Of a stretch of DNA of 40,056 nucleotides, positions 3,476 to 37,360 are shown in pieces. Source of the stretch: Octopus bimaculoides (Eukaryota); contig NC_068981.1 of the NCBI RefSeq assembly GCF_001194135.2, positions 25,331,369 through 25,371,424 on the forward strand, given 5' to 3'. The position numbers were made by a program, and so were the translations under genes. A model generated the notes under the pieces. That model was not told the origin of the DNA. It saw only the letters and a program-made list of their open reading frames with translations, and made no database searches. Within the stretch, counting starts at the first letter, position 1; the number at the start of each line of letters is the position of its first letter.

Positions 3476-4132
3476 GTTTTTGATCATAAATATCAGTAAG
3501 TAATAGTGAAATGCAATTCGGACGCTATGTTACAGTAATACAAGGAAAATAGTTATATCATATTGAAGAATGGCTTAAGGGAATGAGAAATGTTTTTGAT
3601 AAGGAATATCAGTGAGTTGTAGTGAAATGAAAGTACTCATGGTGTGTGAATATCAGTAATTATGAAATGAATTTACAAATGCTGAATGGTGTCAGTGTCT
3701 GTGCTGAAATTCCGACGCTGTATTACAGGAGTGCAGGGCATTGCGTTGTGTGGTTGTCTTTTTGTTTGTGTGTCGATGAATTTCATTTTTCTGTGAATTT
3801 GTGCCCGTGCGTGTGGCTTCACTGTCAGGTTGTCTCTGCATATGTGAAAGAAATTTGTACATTTATATCTGAACGAAGTCAGAAAAATAGGTGTATCTGA
3901 AACATGAATGAATATACATATATGTGTGTGCGTGTGTGTGTGTGTATATGTGAGTTCTTTTAGAGAGAAAAGAGAGAGACACAGATAAAAAAAATGGCGG
4001 TGCCATTGCTTTAGAGTTCCACTCTGCCAGTGAAAGTGGACAAAACACCCACACTTATAAATGAGATCGTGTCTCACTTATGTTTTGTGGGACAAACAGA
4101 CAAACAGACAGAAACTTTTATATATATTATTT

Positions 4133-4500
4133 TATTCTTTTATTTGTTTCAGTCTTTTGACTGCAGCCATGCTGGAGGACCGCCTTTAGCCGAACAAACT
4201 GCCCCCAGGATTTATTCTTTGTAAGCCTAGTACTTATTCTATCGGTCTCTTTTGCAGAGTCGATGCTAAATTATGGAGACGTAAAAACATCAACATCGGT
4301 TGTCAAGCGATGAATGTCGGGGGTGTTGGGGCACAGACACACACCCATATACGACGGGCTTCTTTCAGTTCCAGTCTACCAAATCCAGTCACAAGGCTTT
4401 GGTCGACCCGAGGTTATAGTAGAAGACACTTTCCCAAGATGCCACGCAGTGTGACCAAACTCGGAACGATGTGGTTGGTAGGCAAGCTACTTACCACATG
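4133..4500 (-). mobile_element. SINE family A, near full length
   Basis: Reverse complement of the family-A consensus from head (gtggtaagtagcttgc) to tail (ctgaaacaaataaaagaataa). Confidence 0.85.
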
Positions 4501-9978: not shown

Positions 9979-10385
9979 TAGGAGTGGCTGTGTGGTAAGT
10001 AGCTTGCTTACCAACCATATGGTTCCGGGTTCAGTCCCACTGCGTCGCACCTTGGGCAAGTATCTTCTACTACAAACTCGGGCCGACCAAAGAGTTGTGA
10101 GTAGATCTGGTAGACGGAAACTGAAAGAAGCCCGTCGTATATATGTGTATGTGTTTGTGTGTCTGTGTTTGTGTGTCTGTGTTTGTCCCCCCCCCCAACA
10201 TCGCTTGACAACCGATGCTGGTGCGTTTACGTACCCGTAACTTAGCAGTTCGGCAAAAGTGATCGATAGAATGAGTACTAGGCTTACAAAGAATAAGTCA
10301 TGGGGGTCGATTTTCTCGAATAAAGGCGGTGCTCCAGCATGGCCACAGTCAAATGACTGAAACAAGTAAAAGAGTATAAAAGATA
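9979..10385 (+). mobile_element. SINE family A, full length (tRNA-derived head)
   Basis: A-box-like gtggctgtgtggtaag, B-box-like gggttcagtccc, central (TG)n tract and gtaaaagag tail; more than 8 homologous copies in the window. Confidence 0.9.
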
Positions 10386-10774: not shown

Positions 10775-13200
10775 CTATCTACTGTCCATGCGATAACCCC
10801 CTACTCCATATCTAAGGATTGAAACCGCCCAGGTCTTGATAGCTTCGATCTTATTCCGTCCGTTTAATTTCGACTTAAATATCAGTCTCACTCTCCGCAG
10901 GTACTCTACCTTAAATTTTTCTGTCATTTCTTTCTCCATCAATCTATCCATTTCCCATATCCCCAAGCACTTATAGCCCGTCTCTTCTATCTGCATCATA
11001 ACCTCCTCCGACGGTTTCGTTAGCTCGTCCATTCATTTGATTTTTGCCTCTCTTCAAAACTAACACACCATACTTTCTCAGTTCGAACTCCATTCTGATA
11101 GCAGCACTGAAGGTATACACCGTATCAACGAGGGAACTGACTCGTGTTACATCTTCACCATAAAGTTTCAGATCATCCATGAATTACAGATGGTTGACTT
11201 TTTGTTGGCGGCTTTTGAATACATACCCAGCCTTTGTATTCCTCAGAATCAGTGTTAATGGCATCAAGCACAGTACAGAGATCAGTGGGGACAGGTAGTC
11301 TCCTTGGAAGGTGCCCCTCCTAATTTCTACTGTCCCTAAACTTCTTCCGTATGCTGTCAGGTCCGTCCTCCATTTCGCCATACTTTTTCCATGCAATCGC
11401 TCAACATTCGATGAAATAGAAAATAGGTTCATACATTCTATTATCCAAGAATGTGGTATCATATTGTACCTCTTACGATAGTCGATACATAACACGGCTA
11501 AGTTACTTTTCCTCCTGTTGCAGTCTCTAAGTACAGTTTTGTCTATCAGGAGTTGATCCTTGGTACCTCTGCACTTATGCTTGCAACCCTTCTGCTCATG
11601 TGGCAGGACTCCATTTTTTTCCAGAAGTTCGTACATTGACTTTGCGAGTATTCCAGTCAATAACTTCCACATAAGTGGAAAACAGGATATCGGCATGTAA
11701 TTGTCTGCCGTATTGCCTTTTCCGATGTTTTTCAGACACAGTACTATCCAACCCAATGTTAACTAATCTGGTGTTATTGGTAGGCATTTAACAAGGTGTT
11801 GAACTGCGCAGCTATTCGTGCATGACATTCACCAAAGCTGTTAATCCAGTAGCCTTGAACTCCATCTGGTCCCGGGGACTTCCTGTTGCTCATTTTTTTG
11901 CTGATTTCTTTCACTTCCCAAACTGAAATGACTAGATCTGCCTGTTTTGGACAGACTACTGTTTGTTTCAGTTCTTGCAACCATTCAGCATCCTTTTTGT
12001 GCTCCTTGTCTTTGCTCCAGATGTCACTGCAAAACCTTTGACTTTCAATGTTATCTGGTATCAACTTTTCATCTGTATACTCTCCATTTATTTCTTTGTA
12101 GAATCTCTTCTGATCTACTCTGAATAATCTATTCTGGTGGTAACCCTTCATTCTTTGATCATATCTTACCATCTTTGCTTTCTTTGCAATGAGGCGCTAT
12201 TTCAGTTCCTCCGTCACTACTTTCAGGCCCTTTCTTTCAATATTATACTTCCTTTTCAGCGTCCTGTATTTTTGTTCGGTTTTAAGCTCCCCTTTCTCTT
12301 TTCTGTCTAACACAGAGATTTCCTTCGAGAGCATGTTTAACCCTGCCTGGATTCTTCTTTTCCACCATGAATCTTTTCTTTTGTCTCTCCCGTTATGTTT
12401 CTTTTTCTTTACATCAACACCCACGTTTTCTGCTACAACAATACTTGCTGCCTCGACCAAATTATTTGCTTCTGTGATGTTGTTTGTTCTGATGTATTTC
12501 AGAATTTCATTGACATTTTTCGCTTCTTGGTTCAATTTCCATCGATCAACCTTTTTAAGGTTGCAAATAATGTCGCTATCGTTCTCATGTAGTCTTGCTT
12601 TATTCTGTCGTAGAATGCCTTTTGTTCATCTGTCATGTCGCCATTAGTTTTATTGTCTTCTTTTAGATCATCTATATGTCTCTCATCAAGTAAACAAGCA
12701 CTGCTCCTTTCCTGTGTTATGGGATTACTTTTATTCGTAAGAACTGTATTTTCATTGTTATCTCTGCTGCTATTTTCCATGACCCCTCGTACGTTAGCTT
12801 CGAGCTCTACTTCTGTGAATCAGCAATTTTTTCTTATTGCTCTAGCTTGATCTCTGTTCCGTAAGTTGAAACAATCCTTTTTCTCTCCAATGATCATACA
12901 TACGTTGTCGGTAACCCCTAATTTGAGCCCCATTTTCATCTACCGGGCTGCTCAGGTAGTAACACTCCATGACCACAGCATTAATTTGCTTGCTCCATCT
13001 ACGCACTGTGTGGTGGTCCCTTTCTGGATATCGACAGGCTGGAGCCAGACACGAATCTCTGAGCCTAACGGGTGTAACACTGTCACCGTCATTGGCTTCA
13101 GTTTCAATACCACCATTATTCACAATATTTTGTTTCTTCATTGTCACTCATATGAGGTAGCGATTATCAGGTTGCGCAATTACCAGTGTTTTTATTGTGA
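10775..13200 (-). mobile_element. RLE-type (R4/Dong-like) non-LTR retrotransposon, N-terminus through RT and thumb, frameshifted and lacking its 3' end
   Basis: ORF pieces: RRWSKQINAVVMECYY..RGYRQRMY..LTEQR; SPGPDGVQGYWI; [16 protein letters not shown]; [15 protein letters not shown]; [15 protein letters not shown]; [11 protein letters not shown]; MDDLKLY; EYLRRVRLIFKSKLNGRNK. Confidence 0.92.
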
Positions 13201-13234: not shown

Positions 13235-13548
13235 NNNNNNNNNNNNNNNNNNNNNNNNNNNNNNNNNNNNNNNNNNNNNNNNNNNNNNNNNNNNNNNNNN
13301 NNNNNNNNNNNNNNNNNNNNNNNNNNNNNNNNNNNNNNNNNNNNNNNNNNNNNNNNNNNNNNNNNNNNNNNNNNNNNNNNNNNNNNNNNNNNNNNNNNNN
13401 NNNNNNNNNNNNNNNNNNNNNNNNNNNNNNNNNNNNNNNNNNNNNNNNNNNNNNNNNNNNNNNNNNNNNNNNNNNNNNNNNNNNNNNNNNNNNNNNNNNN
13501 NNNNNNNNNNNNNNNNNNNNNNNNNNNNNNNNNNNNNNNNNNNNNNNN
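13235..13548. other. Assembly gap (N run)
   Basis: Run of n. Confidence 1.
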
Positions 13549-14569: not shown

Positions 14570-14801
14570 GGCGGCGAGCTGGCAGAAACGTTAGCACGCC
14601 AGACGAAATGCTTAGCGGTATTTCGTCTGCAGTTACGTTCTGAGTTCAAATTCCACCGAGGTCGACTTTGCCTTTCATCCTTTCGGGGTCGATAAATTAA
14701 GTACCAGTTACGCACTGGAGTCGATGTAATCGACCTAATACCTTTGTCTGTCCTTGTTTGTCCCCTCTGTGTTTAGCCCCTTGTGGGCAATAAAGAAATA
14801 A
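14570..14801 (+). mobile_element. SINE family B, full length, inside the gene 1 intron
   Basis: ggcggcgagctggcagaaacgttagc (A box), gagttcaaattcc (B box), gactttgcctttcatcctttcggggtcgataaattaagtacc core; homologous copies at 25790, 26666 and 37156. Confidence 0.9.
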
Positions 14802-15010: not shown

Positions 15011-15071
15011 CTGTATTGATATTCCATATTGTGAAATACTTGACTTAACCGAAATATTTTCTATCTCATAG

Positions 15072-15383
15072 GTGTTCATTCGTGTTGTTTTCTTCCTCTT
15101 CTGCCATGTCATCTTCTCCGTAACTTCGGCGTTATTTACTACCAAATACAAAATACCAACAGATTTGAAAGTCCCATACAAGAGTCCCTCCTGTACAGCC
15201 GTAGGCAATAAATTTCTATCGGCTGAAATGGTTTCAGCTGGACGGTCAAGACTGATCGAAGACGATAAAACTTGCCCAGAATCTTCTCTTTCTGCTGAAC
15301 GTTCAACCTATCCTTGGTACCTGACCATTACTCAGGATTCAACAATTTTCCCTCCATCATATACTGGGGTAGTTTGTCGCTGT
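15072..15383 (+). pseudogene. IL17-like: IL-17-like gene 1, exon 2 5' part (interrupted)
   Basis: Acceptor ttttctatctcatAG at 15070-15071. Translates VFIRVVFFLF..KIPTDLKV..CPES..ERSTYPWYL..FPPSYTGVVCRC, collinear with genes 2 and 3; the RSTC Cys has changed to Tyr. Confidence 0.85.
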
Positions 15384-16390
15384 TGTAGCGACGCAAGTCA
15401 TAATAATAAATTTTGATCGGCAGTAATATGACGTCATTGTCATGTTGCCTGAATAGGCATAATTAGATAGTTTCCCATTGGTTAAAATTACTCCCCATAT
15501 TTGAATTCTAAACTTTCGTCAGAGAAATCTTTCATGAAATGCGGTTCTTAGAATTCAGGTATGAGCAGTTATAAAAACCCTGATTTTTGGGAAATTAATC
15601 AGTAATCGTTGGTTATCACTCATTTCCACGACACTCACTCTTTTGAGATATTGGCTATTTTTATGCCATGTCTATTATTCAATTCAATAAGACTATTTTG
15701 AATTATGGAAGTGGAGAGACAAGTTACTGAAGAGATTGCAAGATTGCAATGAAATTATTTAACAAAAAACTATATACTGTTTATAAATTAATAAAGGACT
15801 GAACCAGTGTGTGTGTTTATTACTGGCATAATGCCTCTCCCAAGGTTTAATTGTATTTCTTTCAACACACGTATCCACATCAAGAATCTTGCACACGAAA
15901 TACACATACGAAATCTAGTAGCTTAGTATGGGAGAATTAGCTAATATAAATTTTATGTCGTAATCCTCTACGACAATTTTCTTTTGACTTATAAATGCAC
16001 TGTAAATATTAAATGAAATCAAATAAATTAATTTAGTAAATAATTTCTGTTTCTTCATTTTCTTCAACCTGTTAATGAAATTTATTTCTGCAACTATGAA
16101 ACTGTTATCATAGCGGTGAAAAGAGCGAGCTTATTTATCTCCAACATATATGTACGTTTCAGCGTCTTGGTGTATATAATTCATCACGGTGTTTACGCAG
16201 CCTGAGTTAATTTTATGTATAATGATAATACTTATAATTAAGTTATAAGTGATGGGTTTCTCACTATAGATTTGTACTCAATAAACATCTGTATTTATTA
16301 TCTTTTCCAAGTCAAAAACATTTAAAACTTGATAATCCAACACAACGGTATAAATTGGTGACCGTATAAGTTAGGTAATTCACCGTTATA
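15384..16390. mobile_element. Solo-LTR-like insertion (1007 bp) with a 4-bp TSD CTGT
   Basis: CTGT at 15380-15383 and 16391-16394. Ends TGTAGCG...CGTTATA form an imperfect terminal inverted repeat typical of TG..CA LTRs (here CA to TA). AATAAA at 16280. Removing the insert restores the IL-17 frame exactly. Confidence 0.75.
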
Positions 16391-16583
16391 CTGTTCAAAG
16401 TGGTTAGACTCTGACAGGCGCAACCACCAATGTGGCATGCTATATAATACAATGACTGTCATCCAACGTATAGATGAATGTCTTGATGAATTGTATGTGT
16501 ATAAACCAAGGCTGATTGAAGTAGCTACAACCTGTGTGTGTGTGCACGTAAGTTTGATGTCGTTAATGGAATATGAAACGTAA
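16391..16583 (+). pseudogene. IL17-like: IL-17-like gene 1, exon 2 3' part (absent from the ORF track)
   Basis: CSKWLDSDRRNHQCGMLYNTMTVIQRIDECLDELYVYKPRLIEVATTCVC..*; TAA at 16581-16583; the 3' UTR aligns with that of gene 2. Confidence 0.88.
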
Positions 16584-16730
16584 AAAAGATCCAAATAACA
16601 AATTGTAAACTGTTATTCGTAATGTGAAGCATCTCGTTGACCACCGTCTGGTTATCATATACTTTATATCGACCTCTATGCATATACATATGCATGCATA
16701 TGCGTGTGTGTATATATATATATATATGTA

Positions 16731-17150
16731 TACTCTTTTACTCTTTTACTTGTTTCAGTCATTTGACTGTGACCATGCTGGAGCACCGCCTTTAGTCGAT
16801 CAAATCGACCCCAAGACTTATTCTGTGTAAGCCTAGCACTTATTCTATCGGTCTCATTTGCCGAACTGCTAAGTTACGGGGACATAAACACACCAGCATC
16901 GATTGTCAAGTGATGTTGGGGGGACAAACACAGGCACACAAACGTATACAGACACACATAAATACATATATATATATACATATATACGACGGGCTTCTCT
17001 CAGTTTCCATCTACCAAATCCACTCACAAGGCTTTGGTCAGCCCAAGGCTATAGTAGAAGACACTTGCCCAAGGTGCTACACAGTGGGACTGAACCCGGA
17101 ACCATGTGGTTGGTAAGCAAGCTGCTTACCACACAATCACTCCTACGCCT
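16731..17150 (-). mobile_element. SINE family A, full length
   Basis: Reverse complement of the 9979-10385 copy from aggcgtaggagtg to the gtaaaagagtaaaagagta tail. Confidence 0.9.
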
Positions 17151-17166
17151 ATGTGTGTATGTATAT

Positions 17167-17444
17167 NNNNNNNNNNNNNNNNNNNNNNNNNNNNNNNNNN
17201 NNNNNNNNNNNNNNNNNNNNNNNNNNNNNNNNNNNNNNNNNNNNNNNNNNNNNNNNNNNNNNNNNNNNNNNNNNNNNNNNNNNNNNNNNNNNNNNNNNNN
17301 NNNNNNNNNNNNNNNNNNNNNNNNNNNNNNNNNNNNNNNNNNNNNNNNNNNNNNNNNNNNNNNNNNNNNNNNNNNNNNNNNNNNNNNNNNNNNNNNNNNN
17401 NNNNNNNNNNNNNNNNNNNNNNNNNNNNNNNNNNNNNNNNNNNN
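17167..17444. other. Assembly gap (N run) flanked by (TA)n
   Basis: Run of n. Confidence 1.
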
Positions 17445-17475
<31 letters not shown>

Positions 17476-18261
17476 CATACAACAAAAATACGTATTCAGA
17501 AGCTTATATCTAATGACAGAAGATGGTTGTTATTAACGTAAGTTGGGTTGCGTTTGATTGAGAAAAGTCACGCGGTGTCATGGTTTGAGGTTGGTATATG
17601 GGTAACAGTTAGTTGGGAAATATTGCATGGCGAACTGCAAATTGACCAAACGGAGAACAGGAAATAGACTAGAAGTCGGTTAGGTTGTTGGCAGGTGGGT
17701 GTAGCAAGGAGCTGCGTGTGCAAGTATATAGTTTTATATGTGGGTATGCAGACGCGCTCATACAGTTTTGCGTGCATGTGTATACTGATGAGAGTGTGCG
17801 CATCTGTACATTGGCACACGTAAGCACATACACTGGCACACACACGCCCAGGAGGAATACTTCCATGTCGCAGGTTCATAAAAGAATGATAGTGTGAAAT
17901 AGTAGAAATTGGCTAAAGAGAGAAGTAAGTAGAAATAGAGAGAGAGAGGTATCGTAATAGAGCGGTAGAGGCAACTGAGGGAAAAAGAGAAAGAGGAATA
18001 ATAAGTAGAGAGGGTGGTCAAATTTATAGAGAAGCAGTTGACAAGGCATTGCGGAAGGGTATACAAAATATAAAAATATAATGAACAATAGGCGTAGAAG
18101 TGGCTGTGTGGTAAGTAGCTTACTTACGAACCACATGGTTCCGGGTTCAGTCTCATTGCGTGGCACCTTGGGCAAGTCTTCTACTATAGCCTCGGGCCGA
18201 GCAAAACCTCGTGAGTGGATTTGGTAGACAGAAACTGAAAGAAGCCCGTTATATATATATA

Positions 18262-18676
18262 TCTTTTACTCTCTTTTACTGGTTTCAGTCATTTGACTGT
18301 GGCCATGCTGGAGCACCGACTTCAGTCGAGCAAATCGACCCCAGGACTTATTCTTTGTATGCCTAGTACTTATTCTATCGTTCTCTTTAGCCGAACCGCT
18401 TAGTTACGGGGACGTAAGCACACCAGCATCGGTTGTCAAGATATGTTGGGGGGGGGACAAACACAGACACACAAACATATACACACACATACATATATAT
18501 ATATATACATATATACGACAGGCTTCTTTCAGTTTCCGTCTACCAAATCCACTCACAAGGCTTTGGTCGGCCCGAGGCTATAGCAGAAGACACTCGCCCA
18601 AGGTGCCACGCAGCGGGACTGAACTCGGAACCATGTGGTTCGTTAGCAAGCTACTTACCACATAGCCACTCCTACA

Positions 18677-18679
<3 letters not shown>
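18262..18679 (-). mobile_element. SINE family A, inner full-length antisense copy
   Basis: Complete reverse-complement copy from head (aggtgtaggagtggc) to tail (gtaaaagagagtaaaagat). Confidence 0.9.
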
Positions 18680-18707
<28 letters not shown>

Positions 18708-18717
18708 NNNNNNNNNN
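18708..18717. other. Assembly gap (10 N)
   Basis: Run of n within (TA)n/(TG)n. Confidence 1.
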
Positions 18718-20497: not shown

Positions 20498-20705
20498 TCT
20501 TTTTTTCTTTTACTTGTTTCAGTTATTTGACTGCGGTTATGCTGGAGCACCGCTTTTAGTCGAACAAATCGACCCCAAGACTTATTCTTTCGAAGCTTAG
20601 TACTTATTTCATCGGTCTCTTTTGCCAAACCGTTATATTACGGAGACGTGAATACACGCACGAACATCGGTCGTTAACCGATGTTGTGGGGATAAATACA
20701 GACAC
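20498..20705 (-). mobile_element. SINE family A, 3' half
   Basis: tttacttgtttcagt..gctggagcaccgc..cgaccccaagacttattc..; ends in (CA)n running to 20756. Confidence 0.8.
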
Positions 20706-20757
<52 letters not shown>

Positions 20758-22008: not shown

Positions 22009-22297
22009 ATGGCCCAGTGGTTATGGCAGTGGACTCGCGGTCATAGGATCGCGGTTTCGATTCCCAGACCAGGCGTTGTGAGTGTTTATTGAGCGAAAAC
22101 ACCTAAAGCTCCACGAGGCTCCGGCAGGGGATGGTGGCGAACCCTGCTGTACTCTTCCACCACAACTTTCTCTCACTCTTACTTCCTGTTTCTGTTGTGC
22201 CTGTAATTCAAAGGGTCAGCCTTGTCACACCGTGTCACGCTGAATATCCTCGAGAACTACGTTAAGGGTACACGTGTCTGTAGAGTGCTCAGCTACT
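22009..22297 (+). mobile_element. SINE family C
   Basis: tRNA-like head ggcccagtggttatggcagtggactcgcgg..ggtttcgattccc; homologous to both arms of 24513-25007. Confidence 0.85.
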
Positions 22298-23135
22298 GGA
22301 CCAACGGGTTTTATATCTTTGTATAGGTTGCAAAGGCGTTTCTTTTCGAAGTTTACCCGCAAGTTTTAATTATTTCAGCTTGCCCATCAACATATTTTAT
22401 CAAGTAGAACTTACTGCTTGTCGAGATAAGGAGAAACAGCTAGAATGAATTTATGAGAGGCACATCTAATCAATGGTATTCTAAAGAAATTCGCTATAGA
22501 TTTGTTCACTTCGGTATTATTTCCGGTAATAGCTACAACATTTTCTAAATTTTTGTTATAAACACTTAACACATACTCTATAAATTCGACATAATAAGAA
22601 GCAGTGAATGATGTCTCACTTACCATTGGCGAAAATGCCAGCAAAACAGTACAATAGTTATTTTGATAAATGTACGAATAAAATGCAAAAAGTCTGACGA
22701 AATACGACGAACCCTTAGTCCAACCATCGAGTACCAACGACGATTTACTCGAAAGTTCACCAGATATTTTCTTTTCCACTTCTCGAGTAAGTTTCTCCAT
22801 GTATTTCTGTAAGGTCACATTTGTCATACTTTCGAAGTTTGTATATTTACGAGTCAGTGGGTCTTTAGTAAAGAAAAGTGGTTTTGAAACAACACACACC
22901 AGCTCAATCTAACCGTAAACGTTTAAGGCCGAGTGACTGACCAAAGAAAACTCGATAAAGATGGTTGTCCGGGTGCTTGAGTAGTAGAATACTCTGGATG
23001 CTGGGTTTTTTTTATATCATTCATAAGATTTGTCCATCAAGTTCCTTTTTTTCTGGGTCAACTTTTCCCAACACCTGCATTTCCATACATACTCACTGTC
23101 TGTTTGGTTAAAATATTTTCTGACGATTTGCTCGT
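22298..23135 (-). mobile_element. hAT-superfamily transposase remnant
   Basis: BED-finger-like WKCRC..KKGT*WTNLMNDIK..HPEY; catalytic LVLDGWT; ITGNN (decayed GDN); CASH (CxxH); LAGKLRKETPLQPIQRYKTRWS; multiple stops and frameshifts. Confidence 0.85.
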
Positions 23136-23919
23136 TTTCATGCGGCCTGGGTTAGTTTAAAATAAATTATATTTCGCCAAAGTTTAATCAGAAGATAGTT
23201 CGACACCCCGCTGGTGAAAGTCTTGTAATGGGTACGATGCTGAAGGGGAGGATGATGTGAATATCGATGTGCTGGATCTCGAGGAAATAAGGACAGTGGA
23301 CGAAGCTGATGTTGACTCCAAATTATATTTACCGTTACTTATTATGCATAGACAAAACACGACGAGCAGGCGTGTATAAAATAATAGAGAGTTAGTTTTT
23401 CTTTGTATGAGAGTGTATAATGTTCCTATCGCTGTAGTAGCACGAAAGAGATAGACAGAGTGATGTTTGTTAGAACGGCGCCTGTGAACAAGTGAGAGAC
23501 AGGAGTAGGAAGTTGTATGGTGAAATATTATAGCCGCCGATCGCCACACGGGAACATTTTCTCTCTTCCTCTGTCATTTTGCCTCTAGTAGTCTGCTTGG
23601 AACTGCTTGCATTTATAAGTATGCAGACCAGCTCGAAAAGGAGATATACTGTTCTAACAATGGTTAAATTAATATAGGTCATTCATTATCTATTTCATCT
23701 TTTCATGGCATAGAAAAGGTAGAGAGCCAAGTGAAAAACACATAAATCTGTGTTCCTCCCAGCCGTATGGCGTGGGAGAATTTCTAGATTCGATTTCGAA
23801 TCTCAGGTAAGACCGATCGAGGTCTCGTCAGTCTCTACAGTCAGATTCAGTTAAAATGTTGGAGCGGAATACAAGATATAATCGCGTTGCAGGCGATGTT
23901 ACGATTCAATGACTTGAAG

Positions 23920-24512: not shown

Positions 24513-25007
24513 TACGACGACGTGAAATTAACGTGCAAGTGGCTGAGCACTCCACAGACACGTGTACCCTTAACGTAGTTCTCGGATATTCAGCGTGACA
24601 AGGCTGGCCCTTTGAATTACAGGCAAAACAGGAAGTAAGAGTGAGAGAAAGTTGTGGTGGAAGAGTACAGCAGGGTTCGCCACCATCTCCTGCCGGAGCC
24701 TTGTGGAGCTTTTAGGTGTTTTCGCTCAATAAACACTCACAACGCCCGGTCTGGGAATCGAAACAGCGATCCTATGACCGCGAGTCCGCTGCCCTAACTA
24801 CTGGGCCATTACGCCTCCACTGTTGTACCTGTATTTCAAAGGGTTAGCCTTGTCACACTGTGTCACGCTGAATATCCCCGAGAACTACGTTAAAGGTACA
24901 CGTGTCTGTGGAGTGTTCAGCCACTTGCACGTTAATTTCACGAGCAGGTTGTTCCGTTGATCGGATCAACTGGAACCCTCGTCGTCGTAACCGACGGAGT
25001 GCCAACC
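24513..25007. mobile_element. Inverted composite of SINE family C (antisense full copy plus sense 3' half) flanked by a 10-bp direct repeat
   Basis: ATCTATAAGT at 24503-24512 and 25008-25017; arms at about 24523-24623 and 24828-24940 are reverse complements. Confidence 0.85.
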
Positions 25008-25789: not shown

Positions 25790-25976
25790 TTGTAAGTACA
25801 CCGGGCAAAATGCTTAGCGGCATTTCATCCGTCTTTACGTTCTCAGTTCGAATTCCGCCGAGGTCCACTTTGCTTTTCATCCTTTTGGGAATCAGTACCA
25901 GTTGAACACTGGGATCGATGTAATCGACCAACCTCCTAATCCAAAACTGCCAGCTTTGAGCCAAAATCTGAAACCA
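25790..25976 (+). mobile_element. SINE family B, degenerate
   Basis: caccgggcaaaatgcttagcgg..cagttcgaattccgccgagg..gtaccagttgaacactgggatcgatgtaatcgac. Confidence 0.8.
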
Positions 25977-26665: not shown

Positions 26666-26879
26666 GGCGGCGAGCTGGCAGAAACGTTAGCACGCCGGGT
26701 GAAATGCTTAGCGGTATTTCGTGTCTTTACGTTCTGAGTTCAAATTTCCCTGAGGTCGACTTTGCCTTTCATCCTTTCGAGGGTCGATAAATTAAGTACC
26801 AGTTGCCTCTGGGGGTTGATCTAATTAACTGGCACCCTCTCCAAAAATTTCGGGCCTTGTGCCTAGAGTGGGAAAGAAT
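26666..26879 (+). mobile_element. SINE family B, full length
   Basis: Same head and core as 14570-14801, with the alternative tail ccctctccaaaaatttcgggccttgtgcctagagt. Confidence 0.9.
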
Positions 26880-27939: not shown

Positions 27940-28482
27940 GTATTTATCCACTTTGTATTATTCCTCTTCTTCAACGCCATCTTGTTCATAATTTCGGCGT
28001 CATTTACGACCAAATACAAAATACCAACAGATTTGAAAGTCCGATACGAGAGACTCTCCAGTGCAGCCGTTGGCAATAAATTTTTTCTACCCGCTGAAAT
28101 GGCTTCAACTGGAAGTAGACAGCCAAGGCTCAACGACGGTGATAAATTTTGCCCAAAATCTCTTTCTACTGATATTATCCTTGAACGTTCAACCTGCCCA
28201 TGGTACCTGACTACTACTCATGATTCAACAGTTTTCCCTCCATCACGTACTGAAGTAGTGTGTCGCTATGGACACTGTCTAGACCTTGACAACAATCATC
28301 AATGTGTAACAGTATATAATAAAATGTCTGTCCTCAAACGTACAGGTGAATGTGTCGATGGATTGTATGTGTACAAACCAAGCGTGATTGAAGTAGCCAC
28401 AGCTTGTGTATGTGCACGAACATTACATAACATTAATGGGAGAAATGAAAGCCAATGTGCAACGAAAAATGGACCAATATAA
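27940..28482 (+). CDS. IL17-like: IL-17-like cytokine gene 2, exon 2 (180 aa, open; start codon uncertain)
   Basis: Acceptor tttctgtcttacAG at 27938-27939; hydrophobic signal-peptide core VFIHFVLFLFFNAILFIISA; motifs ERSTCPWY, EVVC..C, HQC, VLKR..C, VATACVC of the IL-17 cystine-knot family. Confidence 0.85.
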   Translation, partial: VFIHFVLFLFFNAILFIISASFTTKYKIPTDLKVRYERLSSAAVGNKFFLPAEMASTGSRQPRLNDGDKFCPKSLSTDIILERSTCPWYLTTTHDSTVFPPSRTEVVCRYGHCLDLDNNHQCVTVYNKMSVLKRTGECVDGLYVYKPSVIEVATACVCARTLHNINGRNESQCATKNGPI

Positions 28483-30872: not shown

Positions 30873-31274
30873 NNNNNNNNNNNNNNNNNNNNNNNNNNNN
30901 NNNNNNNNNNNNNNNNNNNNNNNNNNNNNNNNNNNNNNNNNNNNNNNNNNNNNNNNNNNNNNNNNNNNNNNNNNNNNNNNNNNNNNNNNNNNNNNNNNNN
31001 NNNNNNNNNNNNNNNNNNNNNNNNNNNNNNNNNNNNNNNNNNNNNNNNNNNNNNNNNNNNNNNNNNNNNNNNNNNNNNNNNNNNNNNNNNNNNNNNNNNN
31101 NNNNNNNNNNNNNNNNNNNNNNNNNNNNNNNNNNNNNNNNNNNNNNNNNNNNNNNNNNNNNNNNNNNNNNNNNNNNNNNNNNNNNNNNNNNNNNNNNNNN
31201 NNNNNNNNNNNNNNNNNNNNNNNNNNNNNNNNNNNNNNNNNNNNNNNNNNNNNNNNNNNNNNNNNNNNNNNNNN
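30873..31274. other. Assembly gap (N run) flanked by (TA)n
   Basis: Run of n. Confidence 1.
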
Positions 31275-31284
31275 ATATATATAT

Positions 31285-31315
<31 letters not shown>

Positions 31316-31317
31316 CC

Positions 31318-31460
31318 ATGGGTTCTTTCAGTTTCTGTCTACAAAATTCACTCACAAGGCTTTGGTCGGCGCAAGGTTATTGTAAAAGATACTTGCACGA
31401 GGTGCCACGTATTGGGACCGAACTCAGAACCACGTGTGTGGGAAGCAAGCTTCTTAACAC
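31318..31460 (-). mobile_element. SINE family A, 5' half, degenerate
   Basis: ttctttcagtttctgtctac..cactcacaaggctttggtcgg..gtgccacg..aagcaagcttcttaacac. Confidence 0.75.
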
Positions 31461-31999
31461 AAATCCACGGCACGCACACAAACGCTTATATATATGTTGT
31501 ACCGTTCCGTTATACGTGTGATAATAAGAAGTACTCCATCAAGCGAGTGTTAGATATCGTTTAATATGCACAAATGTGCGCTACTCTAAGTGCTATTCTT
31601 CTGACATTGCGAAAGTCGGACGAGCTTGTATTGAATCATGTATATTATCATGTAATCGTTCAAGCGGAAACGCAATGAGAAATAACTAGGAGAGAAACAT
31701 AGTATCGAAAGAAAAAACAGAAACAAAGGAAAACGAAATGAGTAAAAAAGCATAGAGGGATGGTAGATAAGAGTTGTGTCCCTTTAAATAGGATTTTTTT
31801 TGTTTTTGTGTGAGATAAATTCGACGGTAAACTTTTTGTGACGCTCTATGAAAAATTATACCATTTAAAAAAATGTAGCCTCTCTATTTTGTTCAGTGGA
31901 AATGTGGGTTTAAGTTAATCGATATGCAATTAATTTGATATGAAAATAAGAATGCTTATTACAATTTATTTATACACTATCAATATAGCCACCGCACAG

Positions 32000-33981: not shown

Positions 33982-34494
33982 ATTCATTTTGCTTATTACT
34001 ACAGTTATGTTCCGTAGTTAAATTTTTTTATATGTACGACAGAGTGTCAGCGAAGAAGGATAATATGTGCACTGGAATGTGTGTGCAGGTGTCTGTATTT
34101 CTATTCTTGGTTGGTTCATGTAATGAGGATTAAACCATAATGATCGGAGTATGTAATTTTAAGAAAGGGTCATGTATATGGAAATATACTCCAATACCAT
34201 TTATTGGTTTGAAATATTTATATAAAATAAAGCCTAATATAGGTTGAGGTAGAAAAAAAAAAGAAAAGGAAAAAAAGGAAATGTTAATGTTGTATTAAAT
34301 ATGATAGTAAGTAAGATAAGAGTTCCCTTCAGTGTTTACAAAATAGAAAACAAACTTATTTGGAAGAAATACGTTTCAGCAGCATTTAGGAAAGTTTTTG
34401 CCTATGTATGTATGTATGTATGTATGTATGTATGTATTTATTTATGTATGTATGTATGTATGTATGTATGTATGCGTGTGTGCATTTTCAAATA

Positions 34495-35197
34495 CAGAAC
34501 GGGGCAGAGAGGACGGACGTTTTTGAAATAGCCATTACTCAGACCCAGCAGGAGGTATATATGTCCGACAGTTACTATTCAGTACGTGGTGTATTGCACA
34601 GGCCAAAACTGACGGTCTGGTGTGCTGTTGGAAAAGCTACAGTCACTGCTCCTTACTTTGTTGAAGACAATAATGAAAATGCTTTTACTGTGAACTCCAA
34701 GCGTTACATCGAGATGACAAACAATTTTTTTGTGCCTGAATTACAACGAAACTTTATGCCTACTCGACGTGTGAGGGATGGGGCGACGGCCCATACAGTC
34801 AGAGCATCAATGGATGTTCTTCGCCCTCTCTTCAGTGACTACTTCATTTCCAGGTTTGCTGATTTGTCCATGTGTGATTATTTCTTGTGAGGAAACCTCA
34901 GGGTACATCTATATGCACATAAGCTCTGTACATTGGACGATTTGAAGGAAGCTGTTCGTATGGAAGTCGCCCAAATCGACAAAGCAATGCTGGAGAGAAT
35001 GGAGGCCAACTTACAAGAACGCCTTCAGAAATGCATCAATGAAAACAAGCACCACATGATGGCTGTTGTTTTGCACACTCACATTTGACAAATGCTAATT
35101 CAAAACGAACACATTGATGTCAAAGAAATTTGTTTGCATCTAAAATGAATGATTTTGTGAAGTTTTCAAAAACGTCCGTCCTCTCTGTCCCATATTA
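34495..35197 (+). mobile_element. Internally deleted Tc1/mariner element (DD41D/Visitor-like) with TIRs and a TA TSD
   Basis: 34-bp TIRs containing cagagaggacggacgtttttgaaa (34495-34528 and 35164-35197), TA on both sides. The ORF reads LHRPKLTVWCA..PYFVEDN..TVNSKRY..DGATAHT..LSMCDYFL*G; the WPPRSPD motif is deleted. Confidence 0.88.
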
Positions 35198-35538: not shown

Positions 35539-36069
35539 TTACGACTCATATTCGTCACCATTTCCTCCGGATATTATATCGATTTTCCGTGCACACACAC
35601 AGGCTGTGGCTACATGGATGACACTTGGTTGATAAACGTACAGTCCATCAATACATTCGACTGTACGTTTCAGGACAGTCGTTGGAGTATATACCATCAC
35701 ACATTGATGATTACTGTCAGAGTCCAGACAGTCTGTACAGCGACAAACGACTTCAGTGCGTGATGGAGGAAAATATGTCGAATTGTGGGTAATTTTCAGG
35801 TACCATGGGCAGGTTGAACGTTCGCGGATGATATCAGTAGATACAGGAGATGTTGGGCACGTTTTATCCCCTTCGGTCAGTTCTTGTTGGTCACTTCCCG
35901 CTGGAGCTATTTCAGCTGGTAGAAAAAAGTTATTGCCGATCGCTGCGCTGGATAGTTTCTCGTATTGGACTTTCAAGTCTTTTGGTATTTTACATTGAGT
36001 CGGAATTGACGCCGAAGATATGAACAATACGACGTTGGTGAGGAGGAAGATTACAGCCTGGAGGAGAAC
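35539..36069 (-). CDS. IL17-like: IL-17-like cytokine gene 3, exon 2 (176 aa plus stop)
   Basis: Acceptor atatcacgcAG at 36071-36070. VLLQAVIFLLTNVVLFISSA signal core; ERSTCPWY, EVVCRCTDC (CxCxxC), HQC, VLKRTVEC, VATACVC; 10 Cys; N-glycosylation sequon NST. Confidence 0.93.
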   Translation of the reverse strand, partial: VLLQAVIFLLTNVVLFISSASIPTQCKIPKDLKVQYEKLSSAAIGNNFFLPAEIAPAGSDQQELTEGDKTCPTSPVSTDIIRERSTCPWYLKITHNSTYFPPSRTEVVCRCTDCLDSDSNHQCVMVYTPTTVLKRTVECIDGLYVYQPSVIHVATACVCARKIDIISGGNGDEYES

Positions 36070-37155: not shown

Positions 37156-37360
37156 CGGTGAGCTGGCAGAATCACTTGCACGCCCCGGCAAAATGCTTGG
37201 CGCCATTTCGTCTGTCTTCAGTTTCTGAGTTCAAATTCAGCCGAGGCCGACTTTGTCTTTCATTCTTTCGAGGTCGATAAATTAAGTACCATTTGAGTAC
37301 TCAAGTTAATCGACAAACCCCCACCCGGAAATTGCTAGCCTTGTGCCAAAATCTGAAACC
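37156..37360 (+). mobile_element. SINE family B, degenerate
   Basis: cggtgagctggcagaatc..ctgagttcaaattcagccgagg..ggtcgataaattaagtacc..gccttgtgccaaaatctgaaacc. Confidence 0.8.

What the first reader, a model, noticed from the sequence alone, without database searches (positions are those of the whole stretch)
15380..16394. Hidden solo LTR splits an IL-17-like gene; excision restores the frame to the base
Seen: the ORF track shows a truncated 114-aa product, but the missing C-terminal half sits 1 kb downstream (16392-16583). The intervening 1007 bp starts TGTAGCG, ends CGTTATA and is flanked by CTGT (extendable to CTGTT). Removing it gives V-C-R-C-S-K-W-L-D-S-D, aligning with V-C-R-C-T-D-C-L-D-S-D in gene 3. 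The insert carries TATA-like (15570), AATAAA (16280) and CRE (TGACGTCA, 15429-15436) motifs. Inference: a gypsy-like retrotransposon inserted into the CxCxxC codons and later recombined to a solo LTR, possibly of an uncatalogued family.
Basis: partly seen in the sequence, partly recalled or inferred. Interest (0 to 1): 0.7.

Follow-up and report, generated by a model that had tools for sequence, protein, structure and literature searches.

The report
Insertion-broken IL-17-like gene copy
One of three neighbouring interleukin-17-like genes in this octopus-like genome stretch has been cut in two by a 1-kb piece of non-coding inserted DNA and is decaying into a pseudogene. This is an ordinary event in a large, fast-turning-over gene family, and the claim that the insert is a "solo LTR" could not be proven.

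Summary
Exon 2 of an IL-17-like gene (15072-15383 and 16395-16583, + strand) is interrupted by 1,007 bp (15384-16390) flanked by CTGT/CTGTT on both sides. Deleting the insert plus one repeat copy (1,011 bp) restores one frame and a full Pfam IL17 domain. Two paralogues in the window (27940-28482 +, 35539-36069 -) run uninterrupted through the site, so this is a gain in gene 1, not an ancestral intron. No canonical splice pair removes the segment at the repeat.

The insert is non-coding and single-copy in the window. It has no inverted or direct terminal repeats, no A-rich or microsatellite tail, and no tRNA, Rfam or mitochondrial signal.

A 4-bp duplication, a TG start and the lack of coding sequence fit a solo LTR best. 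Against that, the 3' end is TA rather than CA, the TATA and AATAAA motifs occur at background frequency, and LTR elements are rare in octopus. No octopus genome could be reached, so copy number was not tested. I put solo LTR at about 40%, and "gypsy-like" rests only on prior abundance.

Gene 1 carries further damage: a cystine-knot Cys is replaced by Trp, a (TG)n slip shifts the frame of the C-terminal tail, and its substitutions look close to neutral. Ordinary; low interest.

The parts
15072..15383 (+). Gene 1 (IL-17-like), exon 2, 5' part. It covers the hydrophobic N-terminal segment through ...VVCRC. The acceptor ...tctcatAG|GTG at 15070-15071 is conserved in all three paralogues.
   Evidence: ORF list; alignment with genes 2 and 3; acceptor comparison
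15380..15384 (.). Left copy of the flanking direct repeat CTGT(T). It is part of the ancestral codons CGC TGT.
   Evidence: the paralogue alignment shows that only one copy is needed
15384..16390 (.). 1,007-bp inserted segment, 30.7% GC and non-coding. It starts TGTAGCG and ends CGTTATA. Orientation and class are unresolved; the leading guess is a solo LTR in + orientation.
16391..16395 (.). Right copy of the flanking direct repeat CTGT(T), a putative target-site duplication.
16395..16583 (+). Gene 1, exon 2, 3' part: SKWLDSDRRNHQC...CVCVHVSLMSLMEYET, with the stop codon at 16581-16583.
16401..16403 (+). TGG (Trp) codon where genes 2 and 3 and human IL-17F have the second cystine-knot cysteine (TGT).
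16533..16544 (+). (TG)6 run with one unit more than in gene 3. It shifts the frame after CVC. Without the extra unit the tail reads ARKFDVVNGI*, matching ARK.. of genes 2 and 3.
   Evidence: alignment; read from the sequence
27940..28482 (+). Gene 2, uninterrupted IL-17-like exon 2. It is the closest paralogue, with 80% DNA identity to joined gene 1.
35539..36069 (-). Gene 3, uninterrupted IL-17-like exon 2 (71% DNA identity to gene 1).

Best explanation
Shown: a 1,007-bp non-coding DNA segment was inserted into exon 2 of one of three clustered IL-17-like paralogues. It lies between the two cysteines of the first knot strand (CRC|SKW) and duplicated 4-5 bp of target (CTGT or CTGTT). The insertion truncates the product at 114 aa, which removes half of the cystine knot.

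Inferred: the gene has since drifted as a pseudogene. It shows a knot Cys changed to Trp, a (TG)n slippage frameshift in the tail, and a roughly 3:1 nonsynonymous:synonymous ratio on its own branch.

Inferred, about 40% likely: the insertion footprint is that of an integrase-type mobile element, and the best-fitting class is a solo LTR of an LTR retrotransposon. On that reading, integration made the 4-bp duplication and later LTR-LTR recombination removed the interior. Gypsy would be the superfamily by prior only. The remaining probability lies mostly with an unclassified or non-LTR repeat.
For: Insertion:
- The frame and the full PF06083 domain are restored by removing 1,011 bp.
- Genes 2 and 3 are colinear and uninterrupted at the site. 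Gene 1 is closest to gene 2 (80% against 71%), so one gain on the gene-1 branch is the most parsimonious history.
- The flanking repeat has a chance rate of 0.65% (4 bp) or 0.17% (5 bp).
- None of the six 1,011-bp deletions allowed by the CTGTT repeat has canonical intron ends (sequence).

Pseudogene:
- The alignment to IL-17F structures puts Trp at the knot cysteine of CRNLGC.
- There is an extra TG unit at 16533-16544.
- Gene-1-specific changes are 11 synonymous to 33 nonsynonymous, against 9:17 and 25:32 for the paralogues.

LTR-like by elimination:
- No Pfam domain in any of the six frames.
- No Rfam family, tRNA or mt-tRNA.
- No terminal inverted repeats and no terminal direct repeats or tandem tail.
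- The insert starts with TG. A 4-bp TSD is what Gypsy-dependent animal elements make (PMC10886601). One T-to-C change at 16389 would give the canonical TGT...ACA.
Against: - The 3' terminus is TA, not the near-invariant CA.
- The terminal inverted repeat is 5/7, and 13/30 over 30 nt, which is not significant.
- The TATA and AATAAA motifs are at background level.
- There is no second copy in 40 kb.
- LTR retrotransposons make up <1% of mollusc genomes (PMC6238403). Classified octopus repeats are mostly SINE, LINE and DNA elements, and there is a large 'Unknown' class (PMC8967140).
- The difference in substitution pattern is not significant (Fisher p=0.08).
- The flanking exon halves carry no stop codons, so decay is mild.
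- Copy number, the key criterion for any mobile element, was not testable.
Confidence: 0.8

Rival explanations
1. The insert is a mobile element of another class. It could be the non-coding 3' part of a 5'-truncated non-LTR retrotransposon (LINE or Penelope-like) inserted by target-primed reverse transcription. It could also be a member of the large unclassified repeat fraction of octopus genomes.
For: LINEs make up about 30% of classified octopus TE copies, and 'Unknown' repeats are a significant share (PMC8967140). LTR elements are <1% of mollusc genomes (PMC6238403). TPRT gives variable short duplications, so 4-5 bp is allowed. The window holds an RT-coding LINE-like fragment (RVT_1, E=2e-11). 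The missing canonical CA end removes the one LTR-specific hallmark. The minus-strand frame 2 has somewhat few stops (13; P=0.025 against shuffles).
Against: There is no A-rich or microsatellite tail at either end. No RT, endonuclease or any other Pfam domain appears in six frames. The flanking exons are still open, so a coding remnant should still be detectable. There is no similarity to the LINE or other repeats of the window at DNA or protein level.
Confidence: 0.3
2. The insert is not a mobile element. It is filler DNA captured during double-strand-break repair (an ectopic genomic or organellar fragment), and the CTGT repeat is repair microhomology.
For: It is single-copy in the window. It has no structural hallmark of any TE class.
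Against: A clean 4-5-bp duplication of target sequence with no loss of flanking bases is typical of transposition rather than end joining. A mitochondrial origin is excluded: there are 8-22 stops per frame under the invertebrate mitochondrial code and no mt-tRNA.
Confidence: 0.1
3. The segment works as a newly gained, possibly element-derived, spliceosomal intron. Gene 1 would still make an IL-17-like protein by using cryptic GT-AG sites.
For: Several in-frame GT-AG pairs exist. GT15385-AG16374 adds CNSPLYC. GT15397-AG16407 removes exactly 1,011 bp and gives VVCRCCSDANSDRR. GT15369-AG16400 deletes VVCRCSK. The two exon halves have stayed free of stop codons.
Against: The donors match only 3-5 of 9 consensus positions, and the acceptors have weaker pyrimidine tracts than the three genuine exon-2 acceptors. 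Every such product lacks the second knot cysteine or changes the C-x4-C spacing. About one third of random pairs are in frame anyway. The tail frameshift and the near-neutral substitution pattern argue against constraint.
Confidence: 0.06
4. The segment is an ancestral intron kept by gene 1 and precisely lost from genes 2 and 3.
For: Invertebrate IL-17 genes have variable exon-intron structures, 1-7 exons in mussels (PMC8353272).
Against: This needs two independent exact losses on a ((g1,g2),g3) tree, while both paralogues keep the upstream intron acceptor. No GT-AG, GC-AG or AT-AC pair sits at the boundaries that restore colinearity (sequence). The boundaries carry a direct repeat instead.
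Confidence: 0.03

Closest known systems
Solo LTRs of Ty3/Gypsy-type LTR retrotransposons
   Same: A non-coding block of about 1 kb that starts with TG and is flanked by a 4-bp (possibly 5-bp) target duplication. It has no internal coding sequence and no long inverted repeats. The size lies within the 80-1500 bp range used to find mollusc LTRs (PMC6238403). Animal Gypsy-dependent elements make 4-bp duplications (PMC10886601).
   Different: The 3' end is TA rather than CA. The terminal inverted repeat is weak. No other copy, no partner LTR, and no PBS, PPT or gag-pol is available. Superfamily assignment is impossible from an LTR alone.
Transposon-disrupted paralogues in birth-and-death evolution of expanded immune gene families, here the octopus IL-17 expansion (31-36 genes, PMC8353272; also expanded in O. 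minor, PMC6279123)
   Same: This is a tandem cluster of diverged paralogues. One member is inactivated by an insertion and is accumulating further lesions.
   Different: I found no published description of this particular locus. Inactivation is inferred from sequence only.
Vertebrate IL-17A/F cystine-knot cytokines (e.g. PDB 1jpy, 5n92)
   Same: The Pfam IL17 domain is present. The first-strand motif C-x4-C and the last-strand motif CxC align with human IL-17F.
   Different: Similarity is distant (E about 1e-3 to PDB chains). Gene 1 has Trp at the second knot cysteine and is split. No function has been tested.
Introner-like, transposon-derived intron gains
   Same: A discrete element with a target duplication sits inside a coding exon, and its length plus the TSD is a multiple of three (1,011).
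   Different: The element ends do not supply GT...AG. Only weak cryptic sites are available. No multicopy evidence and no RNA evidence exists.

Membership tests
Solo LTR (LTR retrotransposon) | Short target-site duplication of fixed length (4-6 bp) directly abutting both ends | tested here: met
   CTGT (or CTGTT) at 15380-15383(84) and 16391-16394(95). The chance rate in this window is 0.65% for 4 bp and 0.17% for 5 bp. Only one copy is needed for colinearity with the paralogues.
Solo LTR (LTR retrotransposon) | Termini 5'-TG...CA-3' with a short terminal inverted repeat | tested here: not met
   No placement of the boundaries within the CTGTT repeat gives TG...CA. The best placement is TGTAGCG...CGTTATA, that is TG...TA. 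The inverted repeat is 5/7, and 13/30 over 30 nt. One transition would restore ACA, but that is conjecture.
Solo LTR (LTR retrotransposon) | Many genomic copies sharing both ends, some as direct pairs flanking PBS, gag-pol and PPT | not testable with these tools
   There is no other copy in the window. No octopus sequence is in the protein or contig collections. There were zero exact hits to either terminus in metagenome or viral contigs.
Solo LTR (LTR retrotransposon) | U3-R-U5 layout with promoter and polyadenylation signal | tested here: inconclusive
   TATAAA occurs 5 times and AATAAA 4 times on the + strand, close to what a 31% GC sequence gives. The window background is 1.3 and 1.5 per kb. 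A plausible layout exists (TATATAA at 16173, AATAAA at 16280, about 110 bp to the end) but it is not distinguishable from chance.
Ty3/Gypsy superfamily specifically | RT/integrase phylogeny and gene order of the internal region | not testable with these tools
   No internal region is present. Support comes only from priors: all 275 intact LTR elements in O. bimaculoides were Gypsy (PMC6238403), and a 4-bp TSD is typical of Gypsy-dependent animal elements (PMC10886601).
Non-LTR retrotransposon (LINE/SINE) insertion | 3' A-rich or simple-repeat tail; RT/endonuclease coding remnant (LINE) or pol III tRNA-like head (SINE) | tested here: not met
   No tail on either strand. No Pfam domain in six frames. 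No tRNA-like sequence or Rfam hit.
TIR DNA transposon / MITE | Terminal inverted repeats of 10 bp or more | tested here: not met
   13/30 matches between the first 30 nt and the reverse complement of the last 30 nt. No terminal pair appears among the inverted repeats found.
TRIM / small non-autonomous LTR element | Two terminal direct repeats within the element | tested here: not met
   The longest direct repeats inside 15300-16480 are 10-17 nt and are not terminal.
Nuclear mitochondrial insert (NUMT) | Open frames under the invertebrate mitochondrial code, mt-tRNAs or rRNA | tested here: not met
   8-22 stops per frame under table 5 and no mt-tRNA. No rRNA family match.
Spliceosomal intron (ancestral or functional) | Canonical splice dinucleotides at boundaries that give the conserved protein; shared position in paralogues | tested here: not met
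   The six 1,011-bp deletions allowed by the repeat end in TA, AC, CT, TG, GT or TT (sequence). The cryptic in-frame pairs have weak sites and alter the knot motif. Genes 2 and 3 have no intron here. RNA evidence was not available.
IL-17 cytokine family (Pfam PF06083) | Significant match to the IL17 domain | tested here: met
   Joined gene 1 scores E=1.2e-8, 35.7 bits (cut-off 24). Gene 2 scores 6e-13 and gene 3 scores 1.1e-12. Gene 3 matches IL-17F and IL-17A structures at E about 1e-3.
IL-17 cytokine family (functional member) | Four cystine-knot cysteines (C-x4-C ... C-x-C) | tested here: not met
   For gene 1, the second cysteine is Trp (TGG at 16401-16403). Genes 2 and 3 keep all four.

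The most novel reading that the evidence does not exclude
The 1-kb segment is a very recent, element-derived intron gain (introner-like) in an immune cytokine gene of a cephalopod. It would be spliced through weak GT-AG sites, so that gene 1 still makes a variant IL-17-like protein with an altered knot strand. Alternatively, it is the first sighted copy of an uncatalogued octopus LTR family with non-canonical TG...TA ends.
Probability: 0.05. Interest if true: 0.55.

Novelty: new member of a known kind. Interest (0 to 1): 0.17.

Why it matters
It matters little beyond annotation. The locus shows gene death by insertion inside the expanded octopus IL-17 cluster, which is expected under birth-and-death turnover of immune gene families. 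It also flags a gene model that automated annotation would either truncate at 114 aa or wrongly splice. If the insert proves to be a multi-copy element, its exact boundaries here (defined by the paralogues) give a clean full-length reference copy with its target duplication. That would help classify part of the large 'Unknown' repeat fraction of octopus genomes.

Tried and rejected
1. External copy-number and empty-site tests all came back empty, because the collections hold no octopus data.
- A homology search with the joined protein found no hit.
- Exact-product look-ups of the 114-aa ORF, of gene 3 and of an ORF inside the insert found nothing on record.
- Exact scans with both termini and one internal stretch of the insert in metagenome and viral contigs gave zero hits.

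2. Coding remnants in the insert were not found. Six-frame Pfam gave nothing credible. tblastx against the rest of the window gave nothing below E=0.1.

3. Other origins were rejected: NUMT; TRIM, MITE or Helitron-type structure (the target has no A|T site); a tandem or satellite origin.

4. The promoter, poly(A) and CRE motifs were rejected as LTR evidence because they occur at background frequency.

5. The relaxed-constraint test by branch-specific substitutions gave a suggestive but non-significant result.

6. From memory I guessed that ORFs 22411-22899 and 34408-34890 are hAT-like and mariner-like. Pfam did not confirm either, so those labels are dropped.

7. The original octopus genome paper (PMC4795812) is not held.

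Full report
**Context.** The window is eukaryotic: 36% GC, four assembly gaps, and many interspersed repeats. It carries three exons that encode an Interleukin-17 domain (Pfam PF06083):
- gene 1 on the + strand, starting at 15072;
- gene 2 at 27940-28482 (+);
- gene 3 at 35539-36069 (-).

All three begin at a conserved splice acceptor (…AG|GT…). They are therefore second exons of two-exon genes, the commonest structure reported for mollusc IL-17 genes (PMC8353272). A large IL-17 expansion is already known for Octopus bimaculoides (31-36 genes) and O. minor (PMC8353272, PMC6279123).

**Check of the observation.**
- The gene-1 frame runs from 15072 to …GTA GTT TGT CGC TGT (VVCRC). It then enters unrelated sequence and stops at 15414-15416, giving the 114-aa ORF.
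- The rest of the domain resumes in frame at 16395: TCA AAG TGG TTA GAC… = SKWLDSD…, with the stop at 16581-16583.
- Between the two parts lie 1,007 bp (15384-16390; TGTAGCG…CGTTATA), bracketed by CTGTT at 15380-15384 and 16391-16395.
- Deleting the segment plus one CTGT (1,011 bp = 3 x 337) gives one open frame. Its product matches the IL17 profile end to end across the join (residues 78-154, profile 1-80/81, E=1.2e-8).
- The joined DNA aligns without a gap at the site to gene 2 (80% identity) and gene 3 (71%).
- A flanking repeat of 4 bp is found at 0.65% of random placements of a 1,007-bp segment in this window, and a 5-bp repeat at 0.17%.

**Gain, not an old intron.** Genes 2 and 3 read straight through the site (VVCRYGHCLDLD and VVCRCTDCLDSD). 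Gene 1 is closer to gene 2 than either is to gene 3, so a single gain on the gene-1 branch explains the pattern. An ancestral intron would need two exact, independent losses, while both paralogues keep the upstream intron. The six possible 1,011-bp deletions allowed by the repeat end in TA, AC, CT, TG, GT or TT, never AG (sequence). I listed all GT-AG, GC-AG and AT-AC pairs within about 50 nt that keep the frame. Several exist, as expected by chance. Their donors match only 3-5 of 9 consensus positions. Their acceptors have poorer pyrimidine tracts than the three genuine exon-2 acceptors. Every product disturbs the knot motif. Functional splicing cannot be excluded without RNA data, but nothing supports it.

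**What the insert is.**
- It is AT-rich (30.7% GC) and single-copy in the window at DNA and translated level.
- It has 13-32 stops per frame and no credible Pfam match in any of the six frames.
- It has no Rfam family, tRNA or mt-tRNA.
- It has many stops under the mitochondrial code too, so it is not a NUMT.
- It has no terminal direct repeats, so it is not a TRIM.
- It has no meaningful terminal inverted repeats (5/7 at the tips, 13/30 over 30 nt), so it is not a TIR transposon or MITE.
- It has no A-rich or microsatellite tail on either strand. With the lack of any RT or endonuclease remnant, this argues against a LINE or SINE.

The flanking exon halves are still open and carry only about 10% lineage-specific change. 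A coding remnant in the insert should therefore still be visible if there had been one.

By elimination, a solo LTR is the best-fitting known class. It is a short non-coding block with a fixed 4-bp (or 5-bp) duplication and a TG start. Animal Gypsy-dependent elements make 4-bp duplications (PMC10886601), and all intact LTR elements found in O. bimaculoides are Gypsy (PMC6238403).

The case is weak, however.
- The near-invariant 3' CA is absent (TG…TA).
- TATAAA (5 copies) and AATAAA (4 copies) are what a 31% GC kilobase gives by chance, and TGACGTCA is one hit among many possible motifs.
- LTR elements are <1% of mollusc genomes (PMC6238403). SINE, LINE, DNA and 'Unknown' repeats dominate octopus genomes (PMC8967140).

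Because a defining LTR feature was tested and not met, I do not file the insert as an LTR. I rate it as the leading hypothesis at about 40%. Another or unclassified element stands at about 30%, non-mobile filler DNA at about 10%, and the rest is the intron readings.

**State of gene 1.** The insertion lies between the two cysteines of the first knot strand. Alignment of gene 3 to human IL-17F structures pairs VVC and TDC with the C…C of CRNLGC. In gene 1 the second of these is Trp (TGG, 16401-16403), so even precise excision would not restore a canonical knot.

The tail has one extra TG unit in a (TG)n run (16533-16544). Without it the tail would read ARKFDVVNGI*, matching ARK… in genes 2 and 3; with it the tail reads VHVSLMSLMEYET*. 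Another cysteine shared by genes 2 and 3 (STCPW) is Tyr in gene 1 (15309-15311). That position is Ser in human IL-17F, so it carries little weight.

Changes unique to gene 1 are 11 synonymous to 33 nonsynonymous, roughly the neutral ratio. The figures are 9:17 for gene 2 and 25:32 for gene 3. The contrast is only suggestive (Fisher p=0.08). Together these point to a young pseudogene.

**What could not be done.** It could not be run, and neither could the empty-site and RNA-seq tests. The protein and contig collections hold no octopus sequence. Exact scans of metagenome and viral contigs with the insert's termini found nothing.

**Verdict.** Biologically this is an ordinary case of a paralogue in an expanded immune gene family being knocked out by inserted DNA. 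No literature on this specific locus was found. Interest is low.

Noticed in passing
window 16533-16544: The (TG)6 run in gene 1 has one unit more than in gene 3 and shifts the frame after the final CVC. The unshifted frame reads ARKFDVVNGI*, like the paralogues. This is a second lesion, independent of the insertion.
   Followed up: yes
window 16401-16403: Gene 1 has TGG (Trp) where genes 2 and 3 and human IL-17F have the second cystine-knot cysteine.
   Followed up: yes
window ~28260-28275 (gene 2): Gene 2 reads VVCRYGHC. The middle Cys of CRC is Tyr, but both knot cysteines are kept. The middle Cys is therefore not essential in this family.
   Followed up: partly
window 4102-4499, 9979-10385 (-), 16721-17166, 18068-18262, 18250-18695, 20498-20734, 31277-31468: Many copies (75-88% identical) of one interspersed repeat of about 400 bp. 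It is SINE-like and not matched by Rfam. One copy starts only about 140 bp after the gene-1 stop codon, and several abut assembly gaps.
   Followed up: partly
window 14570-14730, 25792-25929, 26666-26825, 37156-37294: A second short repeat family of about 160 bp, 77-88% identical, with a copy 0.35-1.3 kb from each of the three IL-17 exons. The copy near gene 3 has the same absolute orientation although gene 3 is on the other strand. These are probably independent insertions rather than part of the duplicated unit.
   Followed up: no
window 22009-22297 and 24538-24809: A pair of roughly 290-bp inverted repeats, 90% identical and about 2.2 kb apart. They enclose ORFs 22411-22899 and 23184-23549 (-), which have no Pfam match. 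This looks like a DNA transposon with long terminal inverted repeats.
   Followed up: no
window 11184-13147 (-): A reverse-transcriptase-coding fragment (RVT_1, E=2e-11 for 11184-11756) with further ORFs upstream, running into the assembly gap at 13235-13548. It is a non-LTR-retrotransposon-like element unrelated to the insert.
   Followed up: partly
window 13235-13548, 17167-17444, 18708-18717, 30873-31274: Four runs of N (assembly gaps), three of them next to microsatellite or SINE-like sequence. This indicates a short-read scaffold assembly. The finding's region itself has no gap.
   Followed up: no
window 16345-16390: Three spaced copies of an ACSGT(T)ATAA-like 9-mer (16347, 16361, 16382) lie at the 3' end of the insert. 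No mirror copies occur at the 5' end. Their meaning is unknown.
   Followed up: no
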